Shown here: in pieces, positions 16,240 through 63,987 of the stretch
Layout of the letters: each line of letters begins with the position of its first letter
How positions within the stretch are numbered: position 1 is the first letter of the stretch
Sequence record: MK250027.1
Strand: one strand, 5' to 3'
Length of the DNA stretch: 64,000 nucleotides
Notes under the pieces: model-generated
The model's database searches: none
What the model was told of the DNA's origin: nothing
Seen by the model: only the letters and a program-made list of their open reading frames with translations
Made by a program: the position numbers and the translations under genes

Positions 16240-16977
16240 ATGACTAGATCTGAATTTATTGAATGGTTAAAATCAGAAATAACAATGAGTAATACTATAA
16301 ATATTTCTTTATCGGACCGTGAATATGAAAGACTTGTAGATAGAGAACTAAGAATGGTTTATGAATTGGATAATGATAGCGTGCGTTATGATAAATATAT
16401 AATCCCACGAGATGTATTTTATTCTCAAGAATTTAGGAAAACTAGAACTATAAAATTTCCTGATTGCGTTTTATCTGTAGTTAAATTGGAAGAGATGAAA
16501 AGGAGAAATTATATGTATGGTGTGAACGACCCAGATCTATCATGGAACCGTATGTTTTAGACAGATATGTGGATGGGTCCGTAGATGGCGATGGACACTG
16601 TGATGTTTAGGACTATATAGTGGTCTAATTGGGATTAGTTAAAATAGTTTAATTTAGTTGATATAAAGCATAAGTGGAATAGACTTACACATTAGTTATT
16701 TGTGATGGGACATGATCCATATAATGATGTTTATTGTGAAGTAGCTGTAAAGGTAGATGAACAGGAATTATTTGAAGATCCTTGGGTAAGACAATGGATT
16801 GCAGCTAAATGTAAGTTATAGGTTGTGAAAAAATTAGGAACATTTACAGTGACTGCAATTGGAGGTGTAACTGTAAATACAGGAACATATTCAGAAGAAG
16901 CAAATAATGATATAAATGATTGTAAAGAATATTGGACTAATTTACGTCAAGCAGATTTTTTCGAAACAGGTTGGTAA
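16240..16977 (+). CDS. T4 gp13-like neck protein (TAG=Gln)
   Basis: Open to TAA 16975 when TAG is read through; C-terminal KLGTF..IGGVTVN...EEA resembles gp13. Confidence 0.6.
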
Positions 16978-17104
16978 TTAAAGAATTGGTTATTAATAAG
17001 TTAAGATATGTTAATAGAGAATGTAATATTTTGTAATTTATGAATATTGCATTCTCTATTTTTATAAAATAAATAATGTAAAATTAAGAATAATTTTAGT
17101 TAAT

Positions 17105-18904
17105 ATGGGATATAAAAGATATAGTGAAAATACATTTACAGTTGATAATAGTGGTGCTACATCAGGAACTTTAAAAAAAACTTCTGGAAAATATATATAT
17201 TTTGGTATAGCTAAACCAAAAGGAAGCAATACTTTTAGGAATTTAGATTAGTCAGATTTGGATAAAGGTATATAGAGTGATACATCTGGTTGTTCTGCAA
17301 CAATAACATATACATCTAGCAAATCAAATGTTGGACTAATAAATTATACATTATCATAGAATACATCTGGAGCAGATAGAACTATTATATTTAAATATAA
17401 TAATATAGATTTATTTTATATATTATAGAAATATAGTGGTGATAATTTAATATATGAAACTGGTAATATATATGTATGCGTAATTCCGAGCATATCTAAC
17501 TCTCCAGATAAAATATATTTATTTGTTGATCTCAATAATTATAGGCCTACACAAGCACAATTGGATTCAAATAATTATAAAACAATGTCCGGTACAAAGG
17601 GTTTTAATACAACATATTCTGGAAGTGGTTTAATGTTATATTTTTCCAATGTAACTTTACCTGAAAATAAAACAATAAAAGAATTAAAAGATGATGGGAT
17701 ATTAACAGTAGTTAGAGAAAATATTTCATTTACTTCAAATTCTCAGTATAATAAGTAGATACCATATCATATGGAAAAAGTAAATACACCAAGTGCATTA
17801 AATGGTTATTATGATTTTACTGATGAATCAAAAAAAAGTAATGCATTTGATAAAGAATATTCAATGTATAATGCTGCAGGAGGTGTGTATGGTAGTATAA
17901 GATTTAATATATTTAATAGTCATTATTATTATGGTATATATAAATTAAATATAAATGATTATTTTATTTATATAATAAAATTTAATACTTCAAAAACAAG
18001 TGGAATTATTGATAATATAGGCGTTATTGGTGATTATAAATATGGTATATCTTAGACATCTGGTGGTGCTTGGTATACTATTCTGTCTGGTGATATATTA
18101 TGGTATTATTCAAATAATATAACAATAAAAAATATAAATACATCTATTAAAACATTAATATCCAATGGAATATTAGAACCAGTTGAGTCTACAAATACAT
18201 AGTTAAATAATTCAAATTATATATTATATAAAGTTCCTTATAGTTATAATGGAGCAGTAGATAGCGCTGTTACAAGTGTTTCATTTAATGATGATATTTA
18301 TATATATGAAAATTCATCAGAAATAACACAAGATTCTGTAAAATGTATTACAATGGTAAATTTTAGTAATTTATCTACATCATATCATATGGGAATATAT
18401 AAATATAATGCGAACAATGATAAAGTAAAATATACTATATCTTTATATAGTATAGAAGCCTCATCTATTACAAGTGAAACAGGGTATAAATAGTATATAT
18501 TTAATATGGAAAATAATGCATGGACTGATTTTACAGAAACTAGTTCAACATCAAAATATATGAATTTACAATTTAAAAAAGAACCATCAAGTTCAACATG
18601 TTCATATTTACTATGGGAAAAATCTAATACATTATTATATGATAGTTTTAAACCAGAAACGATAAGTAATTTAAAAACAAAATATAATTTAAAATCAAAA
18701 AGTAATGCAGAAGATATAAATCATTTATATGGTCAATATGTATTGAATGTAACAGGTGATACAATATGTAAAAAAGGCAAATCAAGCAGATATACTTGGA
18801 ATGCAACATTAACTAATTATATATTTGAATTAAAAGATGGAGAAACTGAATTTAAAAAGAAATCAAACATAACATTAGTTGGTGCATTTACAATAGAAGT
18901 TTAA
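17105..18904 (+). CDS. Putative virion/tail-associated protein with a BACON-like domain (TAG=Gln)
   Basis: Joins three track ORFs in one frame; SDTSGCSAT...NTSGADRTIIFKYNN..LF.IIQ. Confidence 0.7.
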
Positions 18905-19025
18905 TAATTATTTTAATTCGTTATTCAAATCTAATTTTGCGTAACGAATTTTTTATTTATGTATATTAATACATAGGATTTTATATATTTGTATAGATAC
19001 TGAAATAATAAATTTCAATATTTTT

Positions 19026-19718
19026 ATGACAACATATAAAAAATATACATCATCAATAACTGCAAATATTTCTTCATCTGCTCATACAAATGAAGAATTT
19101 AAATGGTATGTAGGTTCTTCAACATAGTCTACTGTTTATTTTGGAATGGAAGATAATGATAATAACTTTACAGGTAAATTATCAAATTCATCATATACAT
19201 TATCATCAGATGTATCCGGATGTTCTGCAACAGTATCAAATATAGATTCAACAAAAACTGCAGGAATAATATATTTAAATATACCAGCAAATACAAGTAC
19301 AACTAACAGAACAATCGTATTTAAATATAATACAGTTTCATTATTTACAATAATATAGTCAGGTAGCACAACTTCTGTAACTACTATAATATTTAGTATT
19401 GGTGGTTTTTAGGGAAATAATAAAGTTATAATTCACTGGAGTGGAACTAATTTTTCATCAGATGGAACTACTGTAAGTTGTAGAATTAATGATAGTACGC
19501 CGAATTCAGATGGTTCATATAATGCACGATTTACTATAACTATACCGTCTGGATATGGACAATCATATGCAACATGTGATGGTGGATATGTATATAAAGG
19601 ACATAAGTATTCTTTAGTTGAACCATGTACACCATCATCATATGGTAATTATAGATTTAAATGTAATACTACAGAAGTTACTTATACAGATCGTATGGTG
19701 GGTACTATAACTACGTAA
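19026..19718 (+). CDS. Putative virion protein with a paralogous BACON-like domain (TAG=Gln)
   Basis: SDVSGCSAT...NTSTTNRTIVFKYNTVSLFTIIQ. Confidence 0.7.
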
Positions 19719-19777
19719 AGTGAGATATTGTATTTTCTAATTGAGTGTAGATATAAAAATTATTTTTTAATATTTTT

Positions 19778-20584
19778 ATGTCAACATATAATAAATATGG
19801 TTATGAAAATCCAACATTTATAGGATATACAAATTAGACAAATTCTATTATTAAAACAGATGATGGAAAATAGGTTTATTTAGGATTTGAAGATATTGAT
19901 AAATTATTTAAAGGAAAAAATAATATATCTGATGAAATTTAGTTATATGACAATGATTATTCAGATAAAGTAAATGGATTAACGGTAACTGCATATCCTT
20001 CAGATAATACAAATACTGGTTCTGATTTAAGATATACTTCAACATCTTATAAACATAAGTATCAAGTTGCATATAAAGGTATAAAATTATTTTAGCTTGA
20101 TATTAGAGAAAATAATATAATATTATTTGAAATAACTGTTAACTTTTTAATAGAAACACGATTGTTAGACGATACATCTGATAATTATGATGTATATGTT
20201 TCTACAGTCTCTCTTACATTATCATAGTTATTACCATTTAAATTAAATGTTTGTGTTAATTTAGTATATGATTCAACATTAGATGATGGTTCAATTGATT
20301 TAACTGAATGTATAGAAGGTTATGATTGGTATTTTGATGTAAATACTACTGTTGGAAAAGCAATGAATAACAATAATAATCGACCTAATATAATATTAAA
20401 TAAAGGTAATGGTCAATATGGGTTTCATAGTATAGAATTTTTAGATAGTACTAGTAATGATTATCGATTTGTTGGACCAGGTTCTACTAATAACCATACA
20501 AATGAGTATGCAGAAATAATATATGAAAATAAAATATATAGATGTAGTAATGTTAATTTTTCTCCTAATGATATGATATATTAA
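19778..20584 (+). CDS. Putative virion protein (TAG=Gln)
   Basis: Continuous frame with TAGs only; ends TAA. Confidence 0.7.
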
Positions 20585-20635
20585 ATATAAATTATCATGA
20601 ATAAATAATAAAAAGTTATTTTTGATATTATTTAT

Positions 20636-21049
20636 ATGAAAAGACATTCTATTCCATTAAATATACTTGATGAATACGCAAAAACAATTTCATCAAAATA
20701 GGTAAAAATGCTTTATGAATCAAAATGCAATAAGAAATNNNNNNNNNNNNNNNNNNNNNATATGAAATATCAAAATGATAAAAGTTATTCTATATATTTA
20801 AATGATTTCACTCTTGATGAAGCACATTCATCAGTAGACAAAGCATTAGTACGTTATGTAAATAAATATAAACTTCAATTCAACAAGGTATCAGATGGAG
20901 TTTACTTCTATACACCACTTGAAGAGAATTATATTTCTTTACTTAAAAATCTTGTTCAAGATGGATTTGACATTGATCTCTTAAAGGAAAATGTAGATTC
21001 ACAAAAAGCAACAGTTTATTTAGAAAAATTAAAGTTAAATAAGAAATGA
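20636..21049 (+). CDS. Hypothetical late protein (TAG=Gln)
   Basis: Upstream ATG in frame through one TAG; contains an N-run. Confidence 0.6.
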
Positions 21050-21753
21050 TTAAGATAAGAAGACGTAAACCTATTTTCGAGGACGATTAGAATACACAGC
21101 AATAGCAACAACCTGCAACAAATACTTAGCAACCAGCTACATAGGCGCCAGCTGCACAACCATAGTAGAATACAACTGCTCCATAGCAACCAACAAATAA
21201 TCAACAACCTAATCAAACGCAAGATTAGAATAATAATCAACAACAATAGGATTAGAATAATCAACAACAATAGCAACAACCAAATCCTAATGCATAGAAA
21301 GTATAGGATACATTGAAACAAATGGAGAATACATGGTGGATGATTTCTGTTAACCTTCCTGATGAAATTCAAAAAAATATTCCTGATTTTAAACAAGGTA
21401 ATCAACAAGCAGATCCGGCAATTAAAGCATGGAATGATTTCAAACAAAATCCATCAGAAGATACATTTAAAAATTTCTTAAATGGATTTAAATCATTTGG
21501 CGGATTATCTGGTGATTAGAATGCTAATAATAATCAACAACCATAGCAGAATAATGGAACAACAACTCAATAGCAACCTGCTAATAATACACAGCAACCT
21601 AATCAACAACCATAGCAGAATGTTAATGCAGGATTAAAAGCCGCATATTCATTCAGAAAGAATTTAATGGAAAATTTAGCTATTGCAAAATAGAAACAAT
21701 ATTATAATACAGTTTGTGAAGATTATTTTGATAAAAATGAATTTACATTATAA
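21046..21753 (+). CDS. Gln/Asn-rich low-complexity protein (TAG=Gln)
   Basis: TAG interspersed with CAA/CAG in poly-Q tracts; ATGA overlap with the previous gene. Confidence 0.85.
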
Positions 21754-21758
21754 TTATT

Positions 21759-22520
21759 ATGAAGAAATATAAATATGTTTACAACACAAAAACTGGACAT
21801 TTTATAAAGAAACTTAATGAGGATGATTCAAATGTAAAAACCGATACAAATCAAGATAATAATAACTCTAATAATTCAACGGATAGTAAAGATGATGCTT
21901 CTACTGGAAATACATCTTTTAAATCTGTTGAGTCTGATGAAACAATTCAAGACCTTACTGCGAAAGCATAGGAAAATGAAAATAAGTTTCAACAAGACTT
22001 AAATACGCAATAGAAATTATTAGACGCAGCCAAAGCTACTGCATCAAATAAAACACCAGCAGGACCATATGATCCTGTTATGACAGATTAGAATGTTTTG
22101 AATATCATGAAGAAAATAAATGATATGACAAAACAACATGCAATAGATTAGGCAAATTTTCAGGATTAGAAATTAGCTTAGCTTTAGAAATTATCACAAA
22201 CAAATGAATCATATTATAAAATTCCAGAGAAATATAAATGGTTGAATGAATCAAATATTCACACAGCGAAAATCTATATGGGTAATCTTATTAAACCTGA
22301 AGAAGATGCTCCATTAAAAGGCATGGCTGATTTTAAGCGAGCGTTTAAAGATACTGACTTACTTTATGGAAAAGATAAGAACGGATACTTCGTTGTTTGT
22401 GTGGATTAGGAAGATTTTAATACTTTATATGACACTCTTGAAGAAAATTCTTATGTTAGAGACGAAATAATTGATACAGTTATGCCTTAGTTATTTGACA
22501 GACATGAAATGATCCAATAA
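21759..22520 (+). CDS. Hypothetical late protein, possible internal head protein (TAG=Gln)
   Basis: Open to TAA 22518; KKLNED and WLNES motifs. Confidence 0.75.
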
Positions 22521-22544
22521 AAATAATTACATTAATATAAATTT

Positions 22545-23324
22545 ATGCAATATATAAGAACCACAGAAGATTTAGATCAAGATTTAATTTTATATGGAAC
22601 ATATCTGTTATATAATCCAACGACAAATGTAACAAAGTTAAGAGTTTCAGAAAAACCTATATATATAGGATTAGATGATTTCGTTGAAGTATTAAATAGT
22701 CTTAAGAAGATTGCATCTGATTTAAAAATAGTTCCTAATGAATATCCTGTATATCAATATATTCGTAGTAACAAATATAATGGTTCGACATGGAATATTG
22801 TTGCAGGTGTGGTTAATTCAGAGTTTAAAAAGATTGCAGATAAAGAATACTCAATGATTCCTAATATATAGAAGTTAATTCTTCCTAATAAGGAATATAT
22901 TGATTTCCCACATTTTGCCGCTGTTTTCAATGGTCTCATTAATAAGCATGGTGACCTTTGTGGATATTGTGGTGATATTGTTCAGTTCGCAAAAGATATA
23001 AAAGAAAATCCAATGGTTGAATTTCCATCTGGACATTTTGGAATCGAAGATTTAAGAACAGATATTGACGCTTATAATATATTTAAGATGAATAATAGCG
23101 ATACGATAAATTCATTTAAATCTTATTATGAAAATATGTCTGATAAGAAACGATTTTCATTATTTTTAGAAGATCATCCAAATATACTTGATAGCTTTAA
23201 TAATTCAACCGATAATTTTTATCTTAATATATTAAAGCAAACAACAGATAAAGATTTAACAGATGAACATATAAAATTAGCATGTTAGAAAATGCAATTA
23301 TATTTAGAAAATAATAAAGGTTGA
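22545..23324 (+). CDS. Hypothetical protein (TAG=Gln)
   Basis: Joins track ORFs; DFPHFAAVFNG...GDLCGYCGD...EDLRTDID motif. Confidence 0.7.
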
Positions 23325-23349
23325 GAATAAACAAAATTCTCAACCTTTT
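23316..23349. terminator. Bidirectional terminator
   Basis: aaaggttgagaat/attctcaacctttt between convergent genes. Confidence 0.8.
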
Positions 23350-23355
23350 CTTTTA

Positions 23356-24003
23356 TTATAAGCTTTCTATATATTTCTTTATTCCTTCTACATGAATATC
23401 AATTATAGTATTCCTGCCTTCGTTACTCAATAGCCAGGAAGCATCTTCCTTGTTGTCCATAAACATATTCTCTGTTAAACATGCTGGACAATTTGTTTTA
23501 CTTAATACATAGTAATTTGCTTCTTGATCAGGATCACCATCTGAATAATCAGGTCGAAGTTTCTTTCCTAATGGTGTTAGTTTTTCTTCTGCTACTTTAT
23601 ATAATGCAGTTGCTAATTTATCACCTTCTGTTTGACCTTTACTTGTATATACAGACCATCCTTGTGCTTTATACCACTCACCATTTCCAGCTGCATTTAC
23701 ATGAATAGAAATAAAAATAGCTTTATTTCCAGATTTCTTTTCTTCTGCATATTTTGCATTAGCACGTTGAACGCGAAGACTTAAATCATGAGACTGACTT
23801 GTAATCTCTTCAACTTCAGGATGAACAATATAGCATCTATAACCTTCAGAAATTAATTTATTATAAACTTCATATCCTATTGCGCGAACATATGCATATT
23901 CTTTTAATTTAGTCTATGCATTATCAAACACCGGACTGGATTTGCCAGGTGTATTTTGTCCGTGACCCATATCAAGCATTACTAAAACTTTACTCTTTTC
24001 CAT
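23356..24003 (-). CDS. N-acetylmuramoyl-L-alanine amidase (Amidase_3), putative endolysin; single in-frame TAG at codon 30
   Basis: LDMGHG..PGKSSP, RVQRAN, ISIHVNA, LTENMF; missing from the ORF track. Confidence 0.9.
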
Positions 24004-24005
24004 AA

Positions 24006-25469
24006 TCAATAACTTTTATCATATAATTTAAATGTATCTACTGCTAATTCTTTCAAACAATTATTACTTAAACATACTCCATCATTTCCAGCCGTAGGCG
24101 CTAAGAAATTCTTCCATTTGTCTGAAATACTCTTATTTACCTTAATTGTTTTCCTATTGCGTTTACCTTGTTTAATTTCATCTTTACATCTCTATAAAGT
24201 AGAATTAAGATTATCATATATTTTTTGAATATCTTCCTTATCCAATATATAAACGATATAATCAATATTACTAGTTCCTATATATCTTGGAAATAATACA
24301 TATTTTATATTATCATCTGATAATATATCCATTCCGCCTTTACGAGATATAGGAATTCTGAAATTATCTTCACTTGTACTCTTACGTTCAACAACAGCAA
24401 GCTCAAATTTTGCAGGATAATTTGGAACATTTGTTCTATTAGCAATATAAAAATCTCTACTACCAATACGCCTAGATGGTTCTCTTAATGATGCATACCC
24501 AAATTTATTTTTTAATACACCCTATATTCTCTATTTTAAATGAGAAGACGGATTATTATGCCCATAATCATATCTATCTTCATTAAGTGATTTCTTCACG
24601 CTAACTGCAATGGATTCAATTAAAGATTTATATAGTTCTTTTTTATTATTCATATTTTCAGTTAACTATAATTTTGATAACATATTTATTATTCGTTTAT
24701 CAATGACAGCATACTAATCTATATCATCTACCATATCTGCATTTTCTATAATAGCTTTAAAAAATTCGTTGTTAACCTTATTATACATATAAAATGGAAC
24801 ATTATCTATATAACATGTACTTGTATTAAACAATACATATTTAAATTGCTTAATTAACTATTTAAATAATTCAACCAAACATTTTTCGTTTTCAAACTAA
24901 CATTGTCTAATATAAACATTATTTGCTAATTGACTTAATCCCTAATTTACAATCTAAGGAAAATTCTAAACAAATTTTAAAGTTAATTTATCATCTGTAC
25001 TAGTTATCTATCTTTTATTTGATGTCTATATAACAAATCTTTTTCTTTTATCTTTTAATTCAAATATGATCTTATCTGTTATCATATCATATTCATTAAA
25101 CAACATATTAGCAAATGGTATCGCACATGCATCATCATCTACAATTATATCATTATTTTCATACTATGCAGGATAAACCTATATGTAATTCAAATGTGTA
25201 AATGAATCATTAAAACTGAATAAGCATGACAACATATTATATGTATACGGTAATATATCACCTTCACGTGTTTTATACTAACCTGAACAATGCTAAGGTT
25301 CATCATCTAATATTAATAAATAATGATCCTATACAACAGGAAACTAATATCTTTCTGTACCTAATTTCTTTATTAGTAACTATCCTATTTCTATAGGTAC
25401 TGTTGTTCTCATTATAGAATTTGTTAATTCAATATTATTACCAAAATCTATGTCATTAAATAAACCCAT
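24006..25469 (-). CDS. Hypothetical late protein (TAG=Gln), possible internal start at 24653
   Basis: 488 codons with only TAG interruptions; internal MNNKKELYKSLIESIAVSVKKSLNE. Confidence 0.7.
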
Positions 25470-25500
25470 TAAATATAAAATAACTATTTATTGTATTTAT

Positions 25501-25842
25501 TTAAAATGGTAATTCTTCACTAGGATCTTGCTGATAGAATGGAAGACAATTATTTCCGTAATGTTTCTTGAAATACTTTTTCTGAATCTTTTTTTCTTCA
25601 CGTGATTGTCTCATTGATTCCCTCGATACTGTGAAACTTGGACAATTTTCACAAATACCATACATATATTCATGTCTCTCGTTCTCTATATCATCATATG
25701 TTCTATTAGTAAAATGAGGTTGACGAGCACAATGGAACCATGAAATAAACATAGGATATGGATCATCAGTTACCATATCATCATAAGATTTATCATGCGT
25801 ACACTGACACATACAATATTTCTTTCTTAATCTACTTTTCAT
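25501..25842 (-). CDS. Cys-rich hypothetical protein
   Basis: 113-aa ORF. Confidence 0.65.
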   Translation of the reverse strand: MKSRLRKKYCMCQCTHDKSYDDMVTDDPYPMFISWFHCARQPHFTNRTYDDIENERHEYMYGICENCPSFTVSRESMRQSREEKKIQKKYFKKHYGNNCLPFYQQDPSEELPF

Positions 25843-25957
25843 ATTTGTTAAAATTAAAATATTATTATATAGTTTATATAATAATGTATAACTAATGTTT
25901 ACTAAACTTTATTTTTATAATTAAATACAATAATTATAAAATATTTTATTTATAGTT

Positions 25958-27094: not shown

Positions 27095-27103
27095 TTTAAT
27101 TAT

Positions 27104-53206: not shown

Positions 53207-53221
53207 AATTTAAATATCATT

Positions 53222-54772
53222 TTATTTTACTGGTGTAATGAATGGTGTCTTATTAGGATGATTTGGTGTATCTACCAATATCAATTTACTTTCATTTCTT
53301 GTTACCGGTGAATACATATCCAATTTATAATTATCACCAATTTCATATTCGTTTTCATATAATCTTATATTACACATCTATAAATTATTTCCTATGTTTT
53401 CAATAGTAAATTCATTTATAGAAAAGTCAAATATATTCCAATCAATAGTTTTATCAGTCTTAAGCACATCTCCTATAACTTTATCGTCTATTTCCTTTGG
53501 TGAACTTATAACTATTCTTGTTTTATCTGGTGATATGTCTAACATTATATAAGACCATATATCAAACTCAAAATTAACAGGTATATGTTTAGATTTATTA
53601 CCGATCTATATTTGTAATTCATTCTATCTTATAAGAACGTCAAACTATATTTTATTATCTTCATCATATCCTCTGATTAATTTATAAATATTAGTCTTAT
53701 AAATTTTAAGAAACTATGAATTCTCATACCATTTTGTTAATTTTTTATTTGCTTTAGTCATATCAGATGATTTAATAGCTATACCTAATGAGTCAACACA
53801 TTCATCTAACTCAACAACGATACCATTAACTTTTATTAATGAGCCTCTTGTTATTGTTATATTATCACCTAATTCCAACTATAATGTTGTCGATACTCTG
53901 AAATACCAATAATTAGAATCTTTTGAATAATATACCAATCGAATAACCTAACTATCTAATATATAGCTTGCAAGATTAACCCAACATGAATATATAAGAT
54001 GATTTCTTTCTGAATTAATTTCATATATTAAATCATCATGATATGTAATATTCTTTGTTGCAATAGAAAAATCATAATATGCATTAGATATAAGATTTCC
54101 ATTAGAACCAAATATTTGATTTGAAATAATAGATTCTATATCACAGTCTTTCTAAGGATCAACATATGTAGTATTATTATAAGATGTTTCAATAGGTGCA
54201 TCAACATCTGCAACTTCTTGTGATATTGTATCTCCAAACAATTCTTCCTATGATGTTGTAAGTTCTTCTACAGAATCTCGGAATTCCTATGTTTCTTGTC
54301 TGGAAGCAGATGGACTATATTTAGATAATATGACTTTATAATATGTTGGAAGTGCTGCTATTGTATAAATTAATTCAGAAGACTATACTTCAAACAATTT
54401 GTGATATATCTATACATAAACAATATCTCCTTTCTACGGCATTGTATTTACACCAAACATACTTTGCCATTCCTATATTGTTATATTAATTTCCAATGGC
54501 TAAACATAATTTAACCCATAAAGATCTATAGTATATTCACCAGGATTATAATCAGCGTTAGAAACAATAACTTTAATAGTTTTAGGACATTCCAATCCAA
54601 CCTATGTTAATGTATATTCCTATAAAACAACATCTTCAGAATTGATAACAGGTGTTGCTCTTGCCCACAAACAGTCAGTTCCAACAGTCTCTGTTGCTGA
54701 CTGTTGGATCTCCTTAACTGTTTCATATGCTGATTTTATAATCTCATTAATATCAATTCCTAAACCTGCCAT
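53222..54772 (-). CDS. T4 gp14-like neck protein with a C-terminal extension (TAG=Gln)
   Basis: EDVVLQEYTL, FGVNTMPQKGDIVYV..LFEV..YKVILSKY resemble gp14; continuous frame. Confidence 0.6.
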
Positions 54773-56469
54773 TAGTTATTTAATGTTTCATTTATTTTTG
54801 TTTCTATCTATGATATTTCATCGCATATCTTAGATAAATCATCTATTTGTGATTTTATATTATCCCTTGTATTTTTTAATATATTAACTTGATAAGAACT
54901 CATTTGTTTTGTATTTGAATAATCTTTCTTAAATGTTGCAATATTAACCTAAATTTTCCCATATGATATTAATGAAGATTTTAAAACTTTTGAATATACA
55001 CCATATAATGTCATTAAAATTTTAAATTTATCTCTATCTATTCTTATAACTTTCTTTATCTCAGAACATAATACCTAACCGGTTTTTGTATATGCTTGTA
55101 ACTATGGTAATATTTTCTTTAAATCTTCATTAAAATTTGAAACACCTATCATAGATCTATTCTTTGCAATTAATGCTTTATATCTCTTTATATTGTTTTC
55201 TGCTATTTTATTACAATATTCATCATCACCATATAAATCGTTATAATCATACTCTGATAATTTAACACCATAATTAAAATATCTATTCTAATCGCCATTC
55301 GCATATGGTTTATATTTACCAAATAAATCTTTTACCCATTTATATGTCTATCTATTATCAAATGCTTCCCTCTAATCATTCTTACGTTTATTAAAACCAT
55401 TTTCTGTTTTATAATCATTATAACTTTTTACTGTTGAATCCGGTAATGTATAATGTTTATCATTAGTTGATCTATATGTAGATACAACAGAACCATTAAA
55501 ATCCTTATGGACTTCTTCTGGATAATAAATTATTACATAATCATTTAAAGAGGAACCCCAACCTGTACACTTTGATAAATTACTTGCTTTTGATGTTACA
55601 GCACCAACAGTTTTTAATTTCATTTTACCATTATGCTAATTTAAATAAAGATACTTATCAACAAAATCAATACCTACTAAATCTCGTTTATCTCCAATAA
55701 ATGACATACGTGCAATAGTAGGAAATTTTAATTCAGTGCCATCATTTAAAGGCATGGCTAATGTATTTACAATAAGATTATCTTTCTTAACAGCATTTTC
55801 TATTCTATCTTTAGATATATCATCATTCAAGTACCAACGTCTACCTGTTGTCGCAGTAACTAAAGGATTATCATTATCTATTGCAAATAGTTTTAATGTA
55901 TTATTACAGCTTACAACTAATATTTCTCCTTCTTCATTAAACCAAAAACAAAGGTTATCTTTAGATGCTTTATTTACTTTTTCTTTAAGATTTTTATCTT
56001 TTTTAATTTCCTATAATGTATATTTTTCAAAATGTTCATCAGTAAGATTAAATAAATCCATTCTATATTTTGTGAAATAACCATATGTGGCATCAGAAAA
56101 TGCAATGCACGGAATCAACTATGGATCTGGTTTTATAAATAGTTTTGTTGTATAATTTACATATTGGTTAAACAATTCCATATATTTTTTATGTAAAGCA
56201 CGTTTATCATCATCTGAAACTATACCATCACCTTTATAATAAACACTATCTTTAACTTTATTATTCCATGAATTAAATGTATTCTCTATAATAGATTTTA
56301 ATTCGTTATAATACTATTTTGCTTTATAATACATTGTACCTGGATAATACATCTTATAATAAATAAACATTCCTCCTTTATCATTTAGAATATCATTAAC
56401 TAATATATCAGACTGAAGTTTCTCGGTAAGATATTTTTCTGTTATATATTTCTTTAAACTAAATTGCAT
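54772..56469 (-). CDS. Hypothetical late protein (TAG=Gln)
   Basis: 566 codons with TAG-only interruptions; TAATG overlap with the next gene. Confidence 0.75.
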
Positions 56470-56565
56470 AATAATCCTATTTAATATTCTATTTTAATTA
56501 TTTATTTTGATAATTTGATATATTGCGAAATAAATAATAAAACCAATATTTTTATTAATACGGAT

Positions 56566-59187
56566 ATGGGTAGTTTAAATTAGAATAGTATAGCAGATCA
56601 ATATAAAAATCCTTTAAAAAAATACGGTATAGATATATCGAATGAGAATTTGGATGATGTTATTTCAAAAATGACATCATTAACTGACTCATCTTTATAC
56701 TCATAGCAAAACAGTCCATTATATGGTGTATTTAAAAATGTGCTTGATACTTCTGCAAAGCAAGCTGATGCATTTGAACCGGGTGGATCAATAAATGATG
56801 AAATTACTAGTTACCGAGCATGGGATCCTAGACTTCATAGAGTGGACGGATTTGTATCTAGGTCTGCGACAAGCGATGATCACCCAACAGTTGTTCCTTT
56901 CGCTTCAGAAACAGCAGCAGGAGCATTTTATGATATGGTATTTACAATAGAAAAAGGTATCGGTGACAAAATGTCTGAAACTACTGTATATAAAGAAGGA
57001 ACAAATACTAAAGATTCAAATGACAATGAAAAAACATCATCAGATAATACGTTTTATACAGTAGATAAAAATAGTGGTGAAACTATTACAGATGTAAATA
57101 AATCAACAAAAAATTTTTATTTACCTAATAAAACAGGTAGTAATGGAGTAAATGCAGACACAATAAAAAGTTAGATTTTAAATGACGGAGATTCTTATGG
57201 TGTGGCTTCTATTGTTAATCCGTATACATTAACAAAATTATGTGGAGGCCTTGTAAAAGTCAAAGGAAATAATGATGAAAAAGGTAATAATGCAATAGAA
57301 GTAGAAAATCACATGTATGATATTAGAGATTCCCGAAGATTTTATGGTAATGTAATTGAAGGTGAAAATAATACAGATTTTTTAACCGTTACAAATCCTA
57401 CGACGACTAATATAATAACATGGAGCAATTAGGATAGATGGGGACGAACACCATATTATTTTTAGGATTTTGTTTTTTGTAAATATTGGAATATTATACC
57501 TAATAACCGTTTAATAACATTAAGAAAGTATCATGCACCTGTATATGATAATCTTCAATTTTCAAATATGTTTGATAACAAAAAAACACATCCGTTTGCA
57601 CCTATTGCTACAGTTGTAACATACTTTGGAGATGATACTGGCAATACATTATCATCATTATTTGGTTTTACCGCCGGTACAAAATGGAGAGAATTAAAAT
57701 CAGATGTACATGATGTCCAAGGAGATTCTGGTTCAGATCCACATGCAGTTATTGATAACATGTTCACAGGCGGTGGCGGATTTTCTACCGGTGAATCTAA
57801 TATAATGCAACAAGTTATTGGTGGTGCAAATATGCTTACTGGTAAAATGTTTTCATTAGGTAAATTTGTCGGATTATTAAGTCCAAATGGATATAACATG
57901 GGTAAGGATTAGGCAGTATTTGATAAAATCTCATAGGCGAATGTGGATCCATCAGAACAAATATATGCAAATAAAATTAAAGGTCCTGTTAATAGAATTG
58001 AAACAACTAAAGCAAGAGATGCCGGTATTGTATTTGATTAGAAATTTAGTTTAACTTGTCAATATGTAGCAAGACCTATTGGTGGTGTTAATACAAAAGC
58101 AGCAATGCTTGATATATTATCAAACTGCATGGAAATGGCATCTGCTGATGCAGTATTTTGGGGTGGTGGATATAGATTTAATATTAAGCCTCACATGTAT
58201 CCATTTAAAAATACAGCATTTAAAAATAGAATAATGGATGATTTATATGCAGGTCGTATATTTGGTAAAGATGGAGCATTATCACATACAGTAGAAGGTA
58301 TAAAATCATTTGGTACAGATGCATCCGGTAATTTCTCTTGGAGTGAAATCGGTAAACATTTAAGTGAATATCTTGGTGAGACTTTAGGTGCATTAGGTGA
58401 AATGTTCAATACATTACAGAATATGGTTTTTGGTTCAGGCGGTAGTTCAATTGGAGACTGGTTAAAAGGTAAAGGAAATGATATTGGAGGCGATAGTAGC
58501 ACAGCTGGTGATAATGGGGCGAAAAAACTTAATAGCTTAGGTAAAAATCTTAATATGATGTGGCGATCAAAAGTTATCCAATCATCAACAATGCCATCCA
58601 TTACCGGTATGCGTGCATTATTAACAGGTGAAGCAGTTGGAAACTGGCATTTAACAGTAGGTAATCCTCTAAATCCTATTATGGTAATTGGTAATCTTAT
58701 CTGTACAGATATGAAAGTAGAAGTCGGAGAAGAATTAGGTCCTGATGATTTTCCAACAGAATTAAAAGTTGTATATACGTTAGAACATGGTATGCCACGT
58801 GATAAATCTGGTATACAATCTATGTTTAATAGGGGTGGTGGTCGTATATATTAGTTACCTGACTGGATTAGAGCATCTTCTGATTATGAAACAAAAGTTG
58901 ATAACTATACTGGTGGAAGTAACTTCTATCAACCTTCATATATGAGTTCGTCAAAACTTATGGCAATATCTGGTGCTCATGGATACTAGACCTTTAAATA
59001 TGATAAAGGTAAAACACCTGATATAAATGCACATACATCAAATGTTGTTATAGCTAAATTCACACCGCCTGATGTAGATGCAGCTATCAGTAATATAGTT
59101 GATAAATCTTCATCATTCTTTGGTTCTAATAATTCATCTAGAGCATGGATTAGAGGTACAACAGCTACAAGAAAACTTATGAATTAA
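56566..59187 (+). CDS. Putative baseplate/tail-tube-initiator-like structural protein (TAG=Gln)
   Basis: Four track ORFs join in one frame; WHLTVGNPLNPIMVIGNLICTDMKV..GPDDFPTELKV; directly upstream of the gp53-like gene. Confidence 0.6.
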
Positions 59188-59192
59188 TTAAA

Positions 59193-59927
59193 ATGTTTGT
59201 ATATACAATAGATAAAAAACCAGAAATTACAGATTCAAAAGGAAATACGATTGTTGATTTTATTAAACCATTATTTAATAATGAATCAACTGGTGTTGCA
59301 GATTATCAGATTATGCGTGTAGATGCTGAAAAATACCAAATGCGTCCAGATCTCATATCAATGGCAATGTATGGTGATATTGATGAAGCAGAATATATAT
59401 TAAAATTCTCTGGTATATCAAATCCTTTTTCATTAGATAAAGATGATATATTAAAAATTCCTAATGATTAGGAAGTATATGGTATGATGGCGGTTAATTC
59501 ACCAGATGAAGATACCACAAATACTGTAGATACTGCAGCTGAAATACGTCATAATTTTAAATATTATGATCCTGAATTGAATCCATATAATAAAGATGGT
59601 CAATCATATAGAGATTTAGAAAATAAGAAAATACCATCTGGAATTATTGATAAAGGTAAAATTGTCAATAAAACAGGTAATATCATGGTACCATATATAT
59701 CAGAAGATGGACGAACTGCAGTTACTATCCGAAATGGTAAAGTATATTTTGGTGAAGATAGTGGTTTAAATATAGCATCATCTGAAAAAATATCACAGGT
59801 CGCGAACATTACATCAACCATATAGAATGCAATAAATAATACAATGACAAAATTATCAGATTCAAACTGTTTATATAATGGTTCGAACTTAGCAGATTTT
59901 GTAAGAACAAATTTTAATAATAACTGA
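59193..59927 (+). CDS. T4 gp53-like baseplate wedge protein (LysM-like; TAG=Gln)
   Basis: MRPDLISMAMYGD..EYILKFSGISNPFSL..DDILKIP. Confidence 0.7.
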
Positions 59928-59934
59928 TTGAAAT

Positions 59935-62900
59935 ATGAATACAAAATATCCTTTAAATGGTAGACTGGCAACATTAGCAGATTTGGTACATGAATACGGT
60001 CCAAATTCTGGATGGCCTAGTAATAAAACATATGATCTTTTAACATTAAATGCAGATGACACATAGCCATTTTAGACTTTAATTTTTAAATCTACATTAG
60101 ATTCTAATAATAAATTTTAGGCGGAAATACCATATGAAATTGTATATTTTGATGATGTATATTCTAAAAATCAAAAAGATAATAATGGGAAAAATATGAG
60201 GCTTATATAGAGAAATGACAGCTCTGTATTTTATAATAATGAAGAATATACTACTTATGGTTAGTTAAGTCCATCATCATATATAATTGCAAATATTGTT
60301 TCAAATCCTACTAAAATTAAAAATGGTTATTTTGGATTCAAATTTATTGGCGCTAATATAGATAAGCAATCACTCAATTATTAGCAATATTATTATAATT
60401 ATAAGACATCTGATGGAGAAGCTACTGTTATGTATGCGCTTAGAAATATATTATATATATTAAAAAAGTCAAGTAAGACGAACGATAATTAGAAAAAACA
60501 TTTTATTAATAGTATTTTTTCAGATTATACTGAATTAAAAAATTCAGACTATTATAAGAATGAGGAAAATAAACCTATAATGGTAGATGTTCTAAAAGAT
60601 ATATTAGATAATACAGATAAAGAATTTTCATCATGGCAATTAGATACAGATGCATATAAATATTTAGGTGATGCTATATGGACTTCAAAACATATATATT
60701 ATAAAAATTATACAAGTGAAAAAGATAGTACAAAAAATGAATATGAACAAAATATTGTAAAAAAAGCTCGAGCTGCTAAATATTTTACTAATGCCATTGT
60801 TAAATTCAATAATTTAAATAATACTATATATACTATATTAGGTATTAATACTACAAAAAATAACTATTATTCATATAATAGTATGTTGGATGATTCATTA
60901 TATAGGAGATTATTATATTTTTTTGACTTATTTTTAAATTCATAGCGTTTTTTTATAAGTTTTGTAACATCATTTAGATTTTCAAAAATTTCGAATTATT
61001 CATATTTATAGAAAGATCCAGTTTTAAGGTGTGATTTGGGTGTAATGCAGTTATATGAATATATTATAATATAGAATGCTGTACATGATTGGCAAACAGC
61101 ATTGCCCGCTGGTGAAATAACATATAATACATCTATAAATATTATTATACAATATAAAGTAAAATATAAAAATTTAACGCAACTTAGTAATATAATAACA
61201 ACAACATTAGGACCTATTACATTTGATGATATTAGAAAATATAGAACACCTACTGTTAAAGATACAAATGGAAATAATGTTGAAAATGATATATGGTATG
61301 CATTAAAGACATACCCAAAGAATAGTAGTACGTTACCTAATGAAATAAATCCTAATTTACATGGTAATTCTATTACACCAGGATTATATAGTACAAATAC
61401 TATTCTATATGGAACATCGTTTTTCCCAGCTTTACCTCATAAAGATTTTGAAAATAATAATGATTATAATATTAGTAAAGTAAATTATTCATTAGGACTA
61501 TTAAGATGGCCCGTTGGTGAAAACTTAACATTGTTATCATTAGATGATGTAAAGAATTCAATGAATAATCCTAATTTCATTAGTCCTATAACAAATCAAA
61601 AAAACTATGCAGATACAAGTGACGAAACATTATTTGGTGAAAATGATCCTAATGATATTATTAAAAAAAGTGGCATTGCTCCATTTGGTGTATTACGTAT
61701 ACATACTTCATTAGATACATCAGACGAAAATAAATATGGTTCATCTATCTATTTTGATATAAAATTATATAGATGTAAAAATTATTATTATATATCTACG
61801 GAGAATGCTGATAGTGACGATGCAAATGTTTATGCATATTTTATGCCAAAGTATACAGATACAACGCCTTATATATCATTACCAATAATTAAATTAAAAA
61901 ATGATGAAGACAATAGTATAAATAATATTATCACCGAATTAGATAAAAAATTTAAGGATGGATATATTTACTCAATACCATCTCATACAATTATTACATA
62001 TTTTACAATTCAAAGTGGAACTGCAAAAACAATAATATATGCATCTGGTAGAACTGATACTCAAAATAATCTCGGTTCTGATACATATACAAATAAAAAT
62101 TAGATTACGTTCTATTATTATGTAGAAGATAGCAATGAATGGGTACAAGTAACTGGCGATTATATAAATATTAATTCAAATCCATCTGGAAATAATATAA
62201 GTAAACAATATGAAATAACTTTTAATTTATCACAAAATTATCATCAATATTGGCGATTTACATTAAATAATATAAATTAGTATTATTATTTTAGATGTAA
62301 TTATTATGATAAACCAAAAGATAACACATCATTTATAAATATGACTATACATCATCTTTTTGTATCTGATGAGTCTTTAATATAGGGAATGATAGAATAT
62401 CAATTAGGTATGAGAAACCAACAGGATAAATCTACAAATCAAATATCATTAAAATATGCAGTATATAATACAATTACTGATATTAGAAATGATAATGAAA
62501 AACCTAATGATAAGTCATCATTATCAATTATAGAACATGCAATTAATAACGCTGAACAATAGAATGTTATTATATGTATTGATAAAATAATATACATAGA
62601 ACCTATTGCTTTTAAATCAACAGAACGATATGTATCAGAAAAATTTTATGGAAATATATATAGTCCGTTCCATGTAGCATATGAAACAAAATCATTTGAT
62701 GGTATCTCAGCGTTTAATATACAAAAACAAATATATGGATATAATTTTAATTCATGTGCATTATTTGATAAAACTTCAGACTCGCGTGTAAAAATAGAAA
62801 AACTATATAAAAAAGAAAGTGTAAATGTATATTTAGCATTTGAACCTATTTATATAATTAATAATGGTAATACATTTAAAGACAATAATGCAAAAGATGA

Positions 62901-63987
62901 AGATATTATAAATGAGTATTCTACTTATTTTAATACATGTTCAATAACAAATATAAAATTAAGCAATAATGGTACAGAACAAACTATTAACAAGAATTCT
63001 GGTAATTCAAACAATAATTTTATTAAAAGTATATTTTCTAAATCTGTATATATTGACGCAACATCAATATGTATAAGTGTTACAAGTAATAAAACAGAAC
63101 CAATTTCTTCACTTATATATGATACAACCGATGGTTTAATAAACACCTATTTGTTCGATTTTGATATAAAATATTACAAATATAAAAATAATACAGAGAA
63201 ATTTGAAGAAACAAATAGTGTAAATGTAACAAATAAAATATAGTTAATGTAGCTAAATAATACATTAAGAAATATATAGTTGAATGGTGATGAGTAGTAT
63301 TTAATAAATATTGTTCTTAAAAAATTCAAGGAAAGATTAAAACATTTTACTATAACTGTTGTATCTAATATGGATGGATTAGAAGGTGTATGTAAAATAA
63401 AAATTAACGATCTTCCACAAGATTATGAAGAAGACACATTAAAGAAGTTTGTTGATGACGCTGTTTATTATACAAATACATTACAAGTTCCAAAAGGAAC
63501 TAAAATAGAAATAGAAATTATGTATGATTGGGATAATTAGGATGTATTTACATATAATGGATTATCAATAAATAATAGTGAACAGCATGATAAAACAGAA
63601 AATAATATTATATATACAGTAACTGATACTACAATAATACGATTAAATATAAGTTATAAGAATAATCAATCAGGTGGTACAGGAAATCAAATAAATTTAA
63701 ACAATTATGCAATTTAGATAAATTTTTAGAAAAATGGAGATAATGTTAAACCTGTATTATCAATATCGCCTGCTAATTCAACTATAGATATATATTATGC
63801 TACATATACAGATAAAAATAATCCAATAACATCATTAAACGGTGAAAATTCAATACGTTATAATGCAAACTAGGGAATACGTGAATATTCTTCTAATATA
63901 GGTATTTCTGCTACATTATATTATAATGGTCATTTTAAAAGTGGTGATAGCAATGCAACATATCGTTTTTATGAGTTTTCTGAGTAA
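59935..63987 (+). CDS. Large (1350 aa) putative tail/baseplate-associated protein (TAG=Gln)
   Basis: Single frame to TAA 63985 with TAG-only interruptions; N/Y/I/T-rich beta-type composition. Confidence 0.75.

What the first reader, a model, noticed from the sequence alone, without database searches (positions are those of the whole stretch)
16240..63987. TAG is Gln, but only in blocks: a sharply partitioned dual genetic code
Under code 15, genes at 16240-30811 and 49109-63987 become long intact ORFs (terminase, neck, baseplate, amidase). TAG sits at Gln positions in motifs (terminase LL[TAG]ARQ; endonuclease EC[TAG]GK[TAG]HF). Long accessory genes (ligase 711 aa, SBP 527 aa, RF2 378 aa, 530-aa ORF) have no TAG. 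The boundaries at about 16.2 and 49.1 kb coincide with terminators, and the one at 30.8 kb falls at a gene junction. TAG-to-Gln recoding of late genes is established for Lak and some crAss-like phages; this window shows the partition especially cleanly.
Basis: partly seen in the sequence, partly recalled or inferred. Interest (0 to 1): 0.7.

Follow-up and report, generated by a model that had tools for sequence, protein, structure and literature searches.

The report
Lak megaphage TAG-to-glutamine recoded genes
This window is a piece of the published Prevotella megaphage Lak-B8, in which packaging, tail, lysis and homing-endonuclease genes read the stop codon TAG as glutamine while neighbouring genes avoid TAG altogether; the pattern is real but already described for this same genome.

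Summary
With TAG read as sense, 16240-30811 and 49109-63987 become 20 long ORFs holding 194 in-frame TAGs. The blocks at 1-16239 and 30812-49108 hold none, apart from one endonuclease island and a few TAGs at ORF ends. TAG means Gln on three lines of evidence. Four TAG columns of the endonuclease are Q in 85-106 of 116 homologs. The commonest change at TAG between Lak clades is to CAA or CAG. The parent genome carries a Gln-like tRNA with a CUA anticodon.

The window is 100% identical to Prevotella phage Lak-B8 (MK250027, 248001-312000). Devoto et al. 2019 already reported code 15, TAG-free regions over 5 kb, TAG use in structural genes, the CTA suppressor and RF2 for these genomes. It is therefore already known.

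- The TAG-free genes hardly use TAG as a stop either, so this is one code plus codon avoidance, not two codes.
- Across the whole genome the pattern is a gene-level mosaic, and this window is one of its cleanest parts.
- The quoted endonuclease motif lies inside the "TAG-free" block.
- The quoted terminase site is not a conserved Gln.

One addition: the two gene classes carry different upstream promoter-like motifs, one T4-late-like and one of Bacteroidetes type.

The parts
1..16239 (.). TAG-free block A: 28 ORFs of 80 aa or more, including the NAD-dependent DNA ligase (8098-10233, minus strand) and a NADAR-domain gene (2539-3075). It contains 938 masked N letters between 11101 and 15991.
   Evidence: No internal in-frame TAG in 4589 codons, against 65.9 expected at the TAG-using genes' rate. 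Pfam and NCBIfam hits.
16154..16192 (+). Terminator-like hairpin followed by a T run, at the boundary between block A and block B.
   Evidence: Minimum free energy -16.6 kcal/mol, z -5.4, 0 of 200 shuffles fold as well. Sequence.
16208..16216 (+). Late-type upstream motif (AATAAATAT), 32 nt before the first TAG-using gene. Further copies start at 17068, 20600 and 29268 (+) and at 56506 (-).
   Evidence: Genome-wide the motif precedes 57 of 99 TAG-using genes and 12 of 132 TAG-free genes.
16240..30811 (.). TAG-using block B: 14 ORFs with 107 in-frame TAG. It includes the Amidase_3 gene (23356-24009, minus strand, 1 TAG) and two ORFs after the terminase.
27104..29266 (+). Terminase large subunit, 720 aa, 21 in-frame TAG.
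   Evidence: Terminase_6N E 3e-11 and phrog_5989 E 9e-47. TAG column 445 is Q in 79 of 87 homologs.
30823..40009 (+). TAG-free block C1: 197-aa ORF, aldolase-II-like gene, SBP-OmpA fusion, ABC permease-like and ATPase genes, and tandem paralogs.
   Evidence: No internal TAG in 2878 codons. The Lak-C1 orthologs are also TAG-free. Pfam hits.
40431..41303 (+). HNH/DUF723 homing endonuclease with 9 in-frame TAG, an island inside the TAG-free block. A terminator-like hairpin (40064-40093) and a late-type motif (40383) lie upstream.
   Evidence: phrog_559 E 1e-53. TAG columns 81, 149, 217 and 220 are Q in 102, 102, 85 and 106 of 116 homologs. The megablast match to Lak-A and Lak-C starts only after this gene. 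Motif and hairpin.
41351..49055 (+). TAG-free block C2, including RF2 and the 530-aa ORF.
   Evidence: No internal TAG in 1893 codons.
43145..43888 (+). Intron-bearing class-II tRNA-like gene directly upstream of RF2. Its anticodon is unresolved.
   Evidence: ARAGORN -i. Rfam Intron_gpI at 40.5 bits, E 1e-8, below the gathering score of 50. Acceptor stem and variable hairpin covary with Lak-C1.
43973..45109 (+). Peptide chain release factor 2: single ORF without a frameshift, SPY in place of SPF, GGQ at residue 248, no TAG.
   Evidence: TIGR00020 at 402 bits, above the cut-off. Alignment to E. coli RF2. Motifs. It is the only class-I release-factor gene in the genome.
49062..49103 (.). Bidirectional terminator-like hairpin between convergent genes, at the boundary between block C and block D.
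   Evidence: -18.7 kcal/mol on the plus strand and -20.1 on the minus strand, z -6.1 and -7.4.
49109..63987 (.). TAG-using block D: 6 long ORFs (1365, 516 and 565 aa on the minus strand; 890, 260 and 1350 aa on the plus strand) with 87 in-frame TAG. Weak head-closure and tail-sheath matches.
   Evidence: Orthologs in Lak-A1 and Lak-C1 keep many of the TAG positions.
47426..47433 (+). Early-type upstream motif TATCTTTG, which fits the Bacteroidetes -7 element TAnnTTTG. Further copies start at 6401, 10317, 34716 and 42540, each 37-53 nt before a TAG-free gene.
   Evidence: Genome-wide the motif precedes 0 of 99 TAG-using genes and 22 of 132 TAG-free genes.

Best explanation
The window is part of the virulent Prevotella megaphage Lak-B8, which reads TAG as glutamine (code 15).

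Shown here:
- A bimodal set of genes. One class carries TAG at about 10-30 per 1000 codons: terminase, tail and head-related genes, the lysis amidase and a homing endonuclease. The other class has none.
- TAG stands where Gln stands in homologs.
- The genome encodes a tRNA with a CUA anticodon and the acceptor-stem features of its own tRNA-Gln genes. It encodes one release factor, an RF2, which reads UAA and UGA but not UAG. It encodes no GlnRS.
- The TAG-free state is conserved between Lak clades.
- The two classes sit behind different promoter-like motifs.

Inferred:
- TAG-free genes, RF2 among them, can be translated by the unmodified host machinery from the start of infection.
- The suppressor tRNA, charged by the host GlnRS, then competes with host RF1 at UAG, while phage RF2 keeps termination at UAA and UGA.
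- Only then can TAG-containing proteins be completed.
- TAG-using genes are also transcribed late, from T4-late-like ATAAATA promoters. TAG would then be a second, translational lock on late functions.
For: Identity: 100% over window 26743-31500, 31400-40100, 40000-49100 and 49109-63987 to MK250027, with a constant offset of 248000.

TAG statistics. Genome-wide, 68 of 177 genes of 300 codons or more have zero TAG, against 7.65 expected under a uniform rate.

Gln identity:
- Endonuclease TAG columns are Q in 85-106 of 116 homologs. Q is enriched 11-fold, and Q is the best BLOSUM fit at 2.09 against 1.0 for E.
- In the terminase, Q is enriched 4.8-fold at TAG columns, and column 445 is Q in 79 of 87 homologs.
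- Against Lak-A1 and Lak-C1 orthologs, window TAG aligns with TAG 79 times, CAA 15, CAG 13 and AAA 11. In reverse it aligns with CAA 33 times and CAG 7. It never aligns with TGG, TAT, TAC or TTG (Lak-C1 alone).

Translation parts:
- tRNA(CUA) at MK250027 415017-415089 has U1-A72, G2-C71 and G3-C70. Among the 12 phage tRNAs whose sequences were read, only the two tRNA-Gln share this.
- RF2 is confirmed and is the only class-I release factor. No GlnRS or GluRS catalytic domain is encoded.

Selection against TAG: 0 of 74 aligned Gln codons in TAG-free genes are TAG in Lak-C1, against 20 of 73 in TAG-using genes.

Promoter split: the late-type motif precedes 57 of 99 TAG-using and 12 of 132 TAG-free genes (p 8e-16). 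TATCTTTG precedes 0 of 99 and 22 of 132 (p 3e-6). A gp55-like late sigma factor is present at E 6e-10.

Literature: Devoto 2019 (PMC6784885), Crisci 2021 (PMC8346664) and the Borges 2021 preprint (10.1101/2021.08.26.457843) state the same model.
Against: - No peptide evidence exists for Lak phages. Proteomic proof of code 15 comes from crAss-like phages only (PMC9523058).
- Timing is wholly inferred. Devoto et al. found both gene classes expressed in every sample. The Borges preprint notes that in Lak the DNA-replication genes are mostly recoded too, so 'TAG = late' is not a clean rule.
- The 30.8 kb boundary lies between two same-strand genes 11 nt apart with no hairpin, so class and transcription unit need not coincide.
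- 12 of 132 TAG-free genes have the late-type motif, and 42 of 99 TAG-using genes lack it in the scored window.
- Overall sequence similarity does not single out tRNA-Gln as the suppressor's nearest relative: 0.68 to Gln-CTG and also 0.68 to Glu-TTC.
- At distant terminase columns E fits as well as Q (0.77 against 0.76).
- The CUA-tRNA locus was not found by blastn in Lak-B1, B3, B6 and B9.
Confidence: 0.88

Rival explanations
1. The partition is historical, not regulatory. TAG-free genes would be recent acquisitions from standard-code bacteria (RF2, ligase, ABC transporter, aldolase) that have not yet accumulated CAG-to-TAG changes.
For: Several long TAG-free genes look bacterial. After TAG, the +4 base resembles that after CAG (A in 43% and 51%), as expected if TAG arises from CAG.
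Against: TAG-free status is conserved across the Lak-B/Lak-C split: 0 of 74 aligned Gln codons became TAG, against 20 of 73 in TAG-using genes at similar divergence. Most TAG-free ORFs are small phage-only genes with no Pfam family. The 22 genes behind the TATCTTTG motif hold 0 TAG in 5478 codons.
Confidence: 0.07
2. TAG is decoded mainly by the tRNA with anticodon UUA through U-G wobble, with phage RF2 outcompeting it at UAA. Crisci et al. report this tRNA in 51 of 51 Lak genomes. The CUA tRNA would be an accessory.
For: A UUA-anticodon tRNA lies at MK250027 346509-346581. Crisci 2021 reports it in 51 of 51 Lak genomes, against 38 of 51 for the CUA tRNA. The CUA-tRNA locus was not found in 4 of 9 Lak-B genomes, which still use TAG. 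RF2 is the only release factor encoded.
Against: TAA is the main stop, ending 56 of 69 window ORFs, so an efficient ochre suppressor would be costly. Its acceptor stem (G1-C72) is not Gln-like. No in-frame TAA use has been reported. The missing blastn matches may reflect divergence or introns, not absence.
Confidence: 0.08
3. TAG encodes a residue other than Gln, such as Glu, Lys or pyrrolysine. ARAGORN labels the CUA tRNA 'Pyl'.
For: At distant terminase columns E is as frequent as Q. ARAGORN's label appears.
Against: Four strongly conserved Q columns in the endonuclease are TAG. TAG exchanges mostly with CAA and CAG, and CAA is two mutations away from TAG. The residue profile at TAG columns matches that at genuine CAA/CAG columns. 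ARAGORN gives the 'Pyl' label to any CUA anticodon.
Confidence: 0.03
4. The in-frame TAGs are pseudogene decay or an assembly artefact.
For: None beyond the fragmented ORFs under table 11.
Against: There are 194 in-frame TAGs and no TAA or TGA in about 9,600 codons. Seventy-nine TAG-to-TAG matches were counted over the two ortholog comparisons with Lak-A1 and Lak-C1. The same sequence occurs in several independently curated complete genomes.
Confidence: 0.01

Closest known systems
Lak megaphages of Prevotella (Devoto et al. 2019, Nat Microbiol, PMC6784885; Crisci et al. 2021, PMC8346664)
   Same: It is this genome: 100% nucleotide identity to Lak-B8 MK250027, positions 248001-312000. Those papers report code 15, TAG-free regions over 5 kb, TAG use in structural-gene regions, the CTA suppressor tRNA, a universal TTA-anticodon tRNA, RF2, and tRNAs with 'enigmatic introns'.
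   Different: Nothing in kind. Added here for this stretch:
- per-gene TAG counts;
- evidence that TAG-free genes also avoid TAG as a stop;
- the test for conserved TAG avoidance;
- the recoded endonuclease island;
- the split between the two promoter-like motifs, which the held Lak papers do not mention.
TAG-recoded crAss-like phages (Ivanova 2014; Peters et al. 2022, PMC9523058) and the eight recoded gut phage clades of Borges et al. (preprint 10.1101/2021.08.26.457843)
   Same: TAG is read as Gln in a phage whose host uses the standard code. Recoding is concentrated in structural and lysis genes. They carry suppressor tRNAs, and some carry RF2. The model is a translational gate on late genes.
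   Different: Peptide proof exists for crAss-like phages, not for Lak. According to the preprint, Lak also recodes most replication genes, and here the pattern is a fine gene-level mosaic.
'Code change module' of TGA-recoded Jade phages (Borges et al.)
   Same: A release factor encoded in standard-compatible code sits next to recoded late genes. In this window RF2 sits in a TAG-free block, directly downstream of a tRNA-like gene.
   Different: Here the CUA tRNA lies about 120 kb away, no aminoacyl-tRNA synthetase is encoded, and the anticodon of the adjacent intron-bearing tRNA-like gene is unresolved.
T4 late transcription (late promoter TATAAATA read by gp55 with gp33 and gp45; cited from general knowledge)
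   Same: An ATAAATA-core motif peaks 31-40 nt before the start codons of TAG-using genes. A gp55-family gene is present (phrog_234, E 6e-10). The terminase is T4-type.
   Different: No transcription start has been mapped. gp33 and clamp dependence were not examined. The gp55-like gene itself holds 3 in-frame TAG.

Membership tests
Prevotella phage Lak-B8 (Lak megaphage clade) | Nucleotide identity and collinearity with the published complete genome | tested here: met
   100% identity with a constant offset of 248000 over four stretches covering 26.7-64 kb. Stretch 16240-27100 maps with the same length.
Genetic code 15 (TAG = Gln) stop-codon-recoded phage | Conserved genes are intact only if TAG is sense; TAA and TGA remain stops | tested here: met
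   Terminase, amidase, endonuclease and 17 other ORFs. Code 4 does not repair them.
Genetic code 15 (TAG = Gln) stop-codon-recoded phage | TAG aligns with Gln in homologs from other genomes | tested here: met
   distant homologs; codon exchange with CAA and CAG between Lak clades.
Genetic code 15 (TAG = Gln) stop-codon-recoded phage | Suppressor tRNA with a CUA anticodon in the genome | tested here: met
   None in the window. One at MK250027 415017-415089 with a Gln-like acceptor stem. The locus is conserved in Lak-A and Lak-C.
Genetic code 15 (TAG = Gln) stop-codon-recoded phage | Release-factor complement that spares UAG (RF2 present, no RF1) | tested here: met
   prfB scores above its cut-off. 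There is a single RF-1-domain gene in the whole record. The codon specificity of the SPY variant was not tested.
Genetic code 15 (TAG = Gln) stop-codon-recoded phage | Gln found at TAG positions in peptides | not testable with these tools
   No proteomic data were available here. The published proof is for crAss-like phages only.
Temporal (early/late) code partition model of Borges et al. | TAG-free genes are expressed before TAG-using genes | not testable with these tools
   Only indirect support: different promoter-like motifs for the two classes. Devoto et al. saw both classes expressed in all samples.
T4-type late transcription system | gp55-family sigma factor and a TATAAATA-like element at about -10 of late genes | tested here: inconclusive
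   phrog_234 match at E 6e-10. The motif is enriched with a position peak at -40 to -31 from the start codon. No transcription starts are known, and gp33 was not sought.

The most novel reading that the evidence does not exclude
Late functions in Lak phages may be under a coupled double lock. TAG-using genes sit behind a T4-late-like ATAAATA promoter. The gp55-like late sigma gene itself carries three in-frame TAGs behind the same motif. Amber suppression would then have to come before, and license, late transcription as well as late translation. The TAG-free genes behind host-type TATCTTTG promoters would be the only ones readable by the naive host. A recoded homing endonuclease with its own late-type motif would show that mobile genes adopt both signals.
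Probability: 0.3. Interest if true: 0.5.

Novelty: already known. Interest (0 to 1): 0.15.

Why it matters
Stop-codon recoding in phages of standard-code hosts is a striking case of a virus changing the cell's genetic code within one infection. Lak phages are the largest and best-known example. For this window nothing new in kind is shown: the organism, the code, the patchy TAG use, the suppressor tRNAs and RF2 are all published.

What this check is useful for:
- It confirms Gln by independent tests.
- It replaces the 'two codes' picture with one code plus selected TAG avoidance.
- It shows that the TAG classes follow two distinct promoter-like motifs. This makes the untested early/late hypothesis testable on existing metatranscriptomes by mapping transcription starts.

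Tried and rejected
- No whole genome is held for the window. The rest of MK250027 was therefore read in ten pieces outside the window.
- ARAGORN with default settings finds no tRNA in the window. Rfam at gathering score finds nothing.
- The consensus terminator scan missed the 16.2 and 49.1 kb hairpins, because their loops or G+C content fall outside its rules. Folding showed them. Sigma-70 consensus hits were no more frequent than in shuffles and were ignored.
- Pfam and PHROGs gave no family for most ORFs of the TAG-using blocks, so 'baseplate' could not be checked.
These proteins were not sent to any other tool afterwards, and no structure prediction was attempted on recoded proteins.
- Overall similarity of the CUA tRNA to other phage tRNAs does not discriminate its isotype. 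Only the acceptor-stem features do.
- The RF2 homolog search returned only Lak RF2s, so how common SPY is among bacterial RF2s is unknown.
- phrog_12791 gave no match.
- The position of the first TAG within genes looked uniform on inspection. The +4 context of sense TAG is only mildly A-rich. Neither was pursued.
- I tried to place the splice sites and anticodon of the intron-bearing tRNA-like gene by hand and from covariation. They could not be settled.
- Code 4 (TGA = W) was tried and does not open the fragmented genes.

Full report
**What the sequence is.** The window has 26% G+C and eleven N runs. Megablast against the phage collection gives 100% identity to Prevotella phage Lak-B8 (MK250027). 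The offset is a constant 248000 for window 26743-31500, 31400-40100, 40000-49100 and 49109-63987. Lak-B7 is nearly identical. Lak-A and Lak-C are about 80-88% identical where they align. The window is therefore MK250027 248001-312000, one of the 15 curated Lak megaphage genomes of Devoto et al. 2019, from baboon faeces.

**The N runs (tested first, as asked).**
- Window 16240-27100, which holds the three runs inside the finding, maps to 264240-275100 of the record, exactly the same length.
- At each run the only frame open with TAG as sense is the same coordinate frame on both sides.
- The runs therefore behave as length-preserving masks, and the ORFs 20636-21049 and 25958-27094 continue in frame.
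- I did not read the masked letters in any copy, so a stop hidden under an N cannot be excluded.
- Block 11.1-16.0 kb holds 859 masked letters, and its TAG count covers the visible part only.

**The observation.**
- Stop-to-stop ORFs of 150 aa or more add up to 10,400 aa under table 11, 18,536 aa with TAG as sense and 14,233 aa with TGA as sense. The TGA gain is scattered and does not repair the fragmented genes.
- With TAG as sense, 16240-30811 gives 14 ORFs with 107 in-frame TAGs and 49109-63987 gives 6 ORFs with 87. All end in TAA or TGA.
- In-frame TAG per 1000 codons is 0.7, 23.0, 2.2 and 17.6 in the four blocks. Off-frame TAG is 17.5-20.5 everywhere, so base composition is not the cause.
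- At the TAG-using genes' rate, the three TAG-free stretches should hold 66, 41 and 27 TAGs. They hold none internally.
- Confirmed genes: terminase large subunit (27104-29263, 21 TAG), Amidase_3 (23356-24006, minus strand, 1 TAG inside the domain), RF2 (43973-45106), LigA (8098-10230, minus strand), an SBP-OmpA fusion (35172-36752), an ABC ATPase, an aldolase-II-like gene, and an HNH/DUF723 homing endonuclease (40431-41300, 9 TAG).
- Head-closure and tail-sheath assignments in block D are weak. 'Baseplate' is unverified.

**Boundaries.**
- There are strong hairpins followed by T runs at 16154-16192 and at 49062-49103. The second is bidirectional and lies between convergent genes.
- The 30.8 kb boundary is an 11-nt spacer with no structure. 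The next hairpin is at 31424-31455, after the first TAG-free gene.
- That 197-aa gene is also TAG-free in Lak-A1 and Lak-C1. The class change really does fall at a gene junction.

**Which residue TAG encodes.** To avoid circularity I aligned with X at TAG.
1. *Endonuclease.* Against 116 homologs below 70% identity, TAG columns 81, 149, 217 and 220 are Q in 102, 102, 85 and 106. Q is enriched 11-fold, and Q is the best BLOSUM fit.
2. *Terminase.* Against 87 full-length homologs, Q is the most enriched residue at 4.8-fold. Column 445 is Q in 79 of 87. The pooled profile matches that of genuine CAA/CAG columns. E fits about as well as Q on BLOSUM.
3. *Orthologs in Lak-A1 and Lak-C1.* At well-aligned columns, window TAG faces TAG 79 times, CAA 15, CAG 13 and AAA 11. 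Ortholog TAG faces window CAA 33 times and CAG 7. It never faces TGG, TAT, TAC or TTG (Lak-C1 alone). CAA is two mutations from TAG, so this is conservation of the amino acid, not mutational nearness.
4. *tRNAs.* The window has no tRNA by default ARAGORN. The rest of the genome has 33. One has anticodon CUA (MK250027 415017-415089), with U1-A72, G2-C71 and G3-C70. Among the 12 phage tRNAs whose sequences I read, only the two tRNA-Gln share these pairs.
5. *Other translation genes.* The genome has one class-I release factor, the RF2 in this window, and no GlnRS or GluRS. The suppressor must be charged by the host enzyme.

**One code, not two.** In the TAG-free blocks TAG is hardly used as a stop either. 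In the window only 34761-35114 and 46555-47115 could end in TAG. Genome-wide only 7 of 349 TAG-free ORFs could, each with TAA or TGA within 12 codons. Window stops are 56 TAA and 13 TGA. The TAG-free genes read identically under codes 11 and 15.

The avoidance is maintained. Between Lak-B8 and Lak-C1, 0 of 74 aligned Gln codons in TAG-free genes are TAG in the other genome, against 20 of 73 in TAG-using genes. This argues against the idea that TAG-free genes are merely recent imports.

**How typical the window is.** Across the 552-kb genome I called 531 ORFs of 80 aa or more.
- TAG use is bimodal: 68 of 177 genes of 300 codons or more have none, against 7.65 expected. Most of the others have 10-30 per 1000.
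- The classes are clustered but finely interleaved. Among genes of 200 codons or more there are 103 runs against 142 expected (z -4.65). Over all ORFs there are 151 runs.
- The window holds the longest TAG-free run of the genome and is cleaner than average, but it has its own exception, the endonuclease island. That gene follows a terminator-like hairpin (40064-40093). The megablast matches to Lak-A and Lak-C begin only after it, which suggests it is an insertion in Lak-B.

I compared the 100 nt upstream of genes that have at least 50 nt of spacer.
- [ATG]ATAAATA[AT] at -55 to -25 precedes 57 of 99 TAG-using genes and 12 of 132 TAG-free genes of 150 codons or more (Fisher p 8e-16; shuffles give 6-8). 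Its position peaks sharply at -40 to -31.
- TATCTTTG at -80 to -30 precedes 0 of 99 TAG-using and 22 of 132 TAG-free genes (p 3e-6; shuffles give 0.2). It sits within a longer conserved TGTATCTTTGTA, with a T-rich element about 20 nt upstream. Those 22 genes hold 0 TAG in 5478 codons.
- From general knowledge, TATCTTTG fits the Bacteroidetes -7 element TAnnTTTG, and ATAAATA resembles the T4 late promoter TATAAATA.
- In the window the late-type motif precedes 16240, 17105, 20636, 29297, the endonuclease 40431, and 56469 on the minus strand. The early-type motif precedes 6442, 10370, 34761, 42589 and 47463.
- The genome encodes a gp55-family late sigma factor (phrog_234, E 6e-10) at 405195-405581. 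It has three in-frame TAGs and a late-type motif at -35.
- The Lak papers I read or searched do not discuss Lak promoters.
- This supports the early/late reading only indirectly. No transcription starts are known.

**Comparison with the literature.**
- Devoto et al. [quoted passage not shown] They mark regions over 5 kb without TAG, report a CTA-anticodon suppressor among several suppressor types, and report RF2 in all genomes.
- Crisci et al. 2021 align terminases to infer Q. They report the CUA tRNA in 38 of 51 Lak genomes and a UUA tRNA in 51 of 51.
- Borges et al. propose the temporal code-switch model. They note that Lak also recodes most replication genes.
- Peters et al. 2022 give peptide proof for crAss-like phages only.
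- The finding is therefore already known, down to the genome.

**Verdict.** The mechanism as far as it is shown: code 15 through a Gln-like CUA tRNA, an RF2-only release-factor complement, selected TAG avoidance in one gene class, and two promoter-like motif classes. The timing and the gating role are inferred. Interest is low because it is published. The promoter split and the TAG-bearing late sigma gene are small additions that can be tested.

Noticed in passing
window 43145-43888 (+), just upstream of RF2: An intron-bearing class-II tRNA-like gene. Rfam Intron_gpI matches 43291-43465 at 40.5 bits (E 1e-8, below the gathering score of 50). The acceptor stem (GGTCCAT/ATGGACC against GGCGAGG/CCTCGCT) and the variable hairpin covary between Lak-B8 and Lak-C1, so the gene is under selection. 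The D stem is poor, and the splice sites and anticodon could not be settled. A terminator-like hairpin follows at about 43893-43933. It probably corresponds to the 'enigmatic introns' of Devoto et al.
   Followed up: partly
genome-wide in MK250027; window 16208, 17068, 20600, 29268, 40383 (+), 56506 (-); and 6401, 10317, 34716, 42540, 47426 (+): Two upstream motifs divide along with TAG use. An ATAAATA-core motif (T4-late-like) precedes TAG-using genes. TGTATCTTTGTA (Bacteroidetes -7 type) precedes TAG-free genes only.
   Followed up: yes
window 43973-45109: The phage RF2 has SPY where RF2s have the SPF stop-codon-recognition tripeptide; 116 of the 120 Lak RF2s retrieved share SPY. It has an 8-residue insertion after GGQ relative to E. 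coli RF2. It is a single ORF without the programmed frameshift common in bacterial prfB.
   Followed up: partly
MK250027 405195-405581 (L018): A gp55-family late sigma factor homolog (phrog_234, E 6e-10) with three in-frame TAG codons and a TATAAATAA motif 35 nt upstream.
   Followed up: partly
MK250027 346509-346581 (L010:34509-34581): A tRNA with anticodon UUA, complementary to the main stop codon TAA. Its acceptor stem is not Gln-like. Crisci et al. report it as universal in Lak phages, with no sign of TAA recoding.
   Followed up: no
L012:3380-3530 against the phage collection: The CUA-tRNA locus is found by blastn in Lak-B2, B4, B5, B7, B8, A1, A2 and C1 but not in Lak-B1, B3, B6 or B9, although those genomes share the TAG-rich genes.
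   Followed up: no
window 34761-35114 and 46555-47115: The only two ORFs in the TAG-free blocks that could end in TAG. Each has a TAA 3 or 6 codons further on, which would limit any read-through extension once TAG is suppressed.
   Followed up: partly
window 40000-41312: The recoded HNH/DUF723 endonuclease and its upstream spacer are not covered by the megablast matches to Lak-A and Lak-C, which begin at 41312 or later. This suggests a mobile insertion in the Lak-B lineage. One paralog (37% identity, 9 TAG) lies at MK250027 400176-401300. Close database homologs are 389 aa long against 290 aa here.
   Followed up: partly
window 35172-40009: A phage-borne ABC-transporter-like cluster: a substrate-binding domain of NMT1/SsuA type fused to an OmpA peptidoglycan-binding domain, a weak permease-like match (below the Pfam cut-off) and an ATPase. 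All are TAG-free.
   Followed up: no
window 36828-38191 and 42062-42514: Four paralogous small ORFs of 146-165 aa, three of them in tandem, match a single ORF in Lak-C1. This looks like a lineage-specific tandem expansion.
   Followed up: no
window 2539-3075: A NADAR-domain protein (Pfam E 2e-51), from a family of ADP-ribose-processing enzymes, in the TAG-free block.
   Followed up: no
genome-wide in MK250027: The base after a sense TAG is A in 43% and T in 27% of cases, like that after CAG. The base after true stops is T in 56%.
   Followed up: partly
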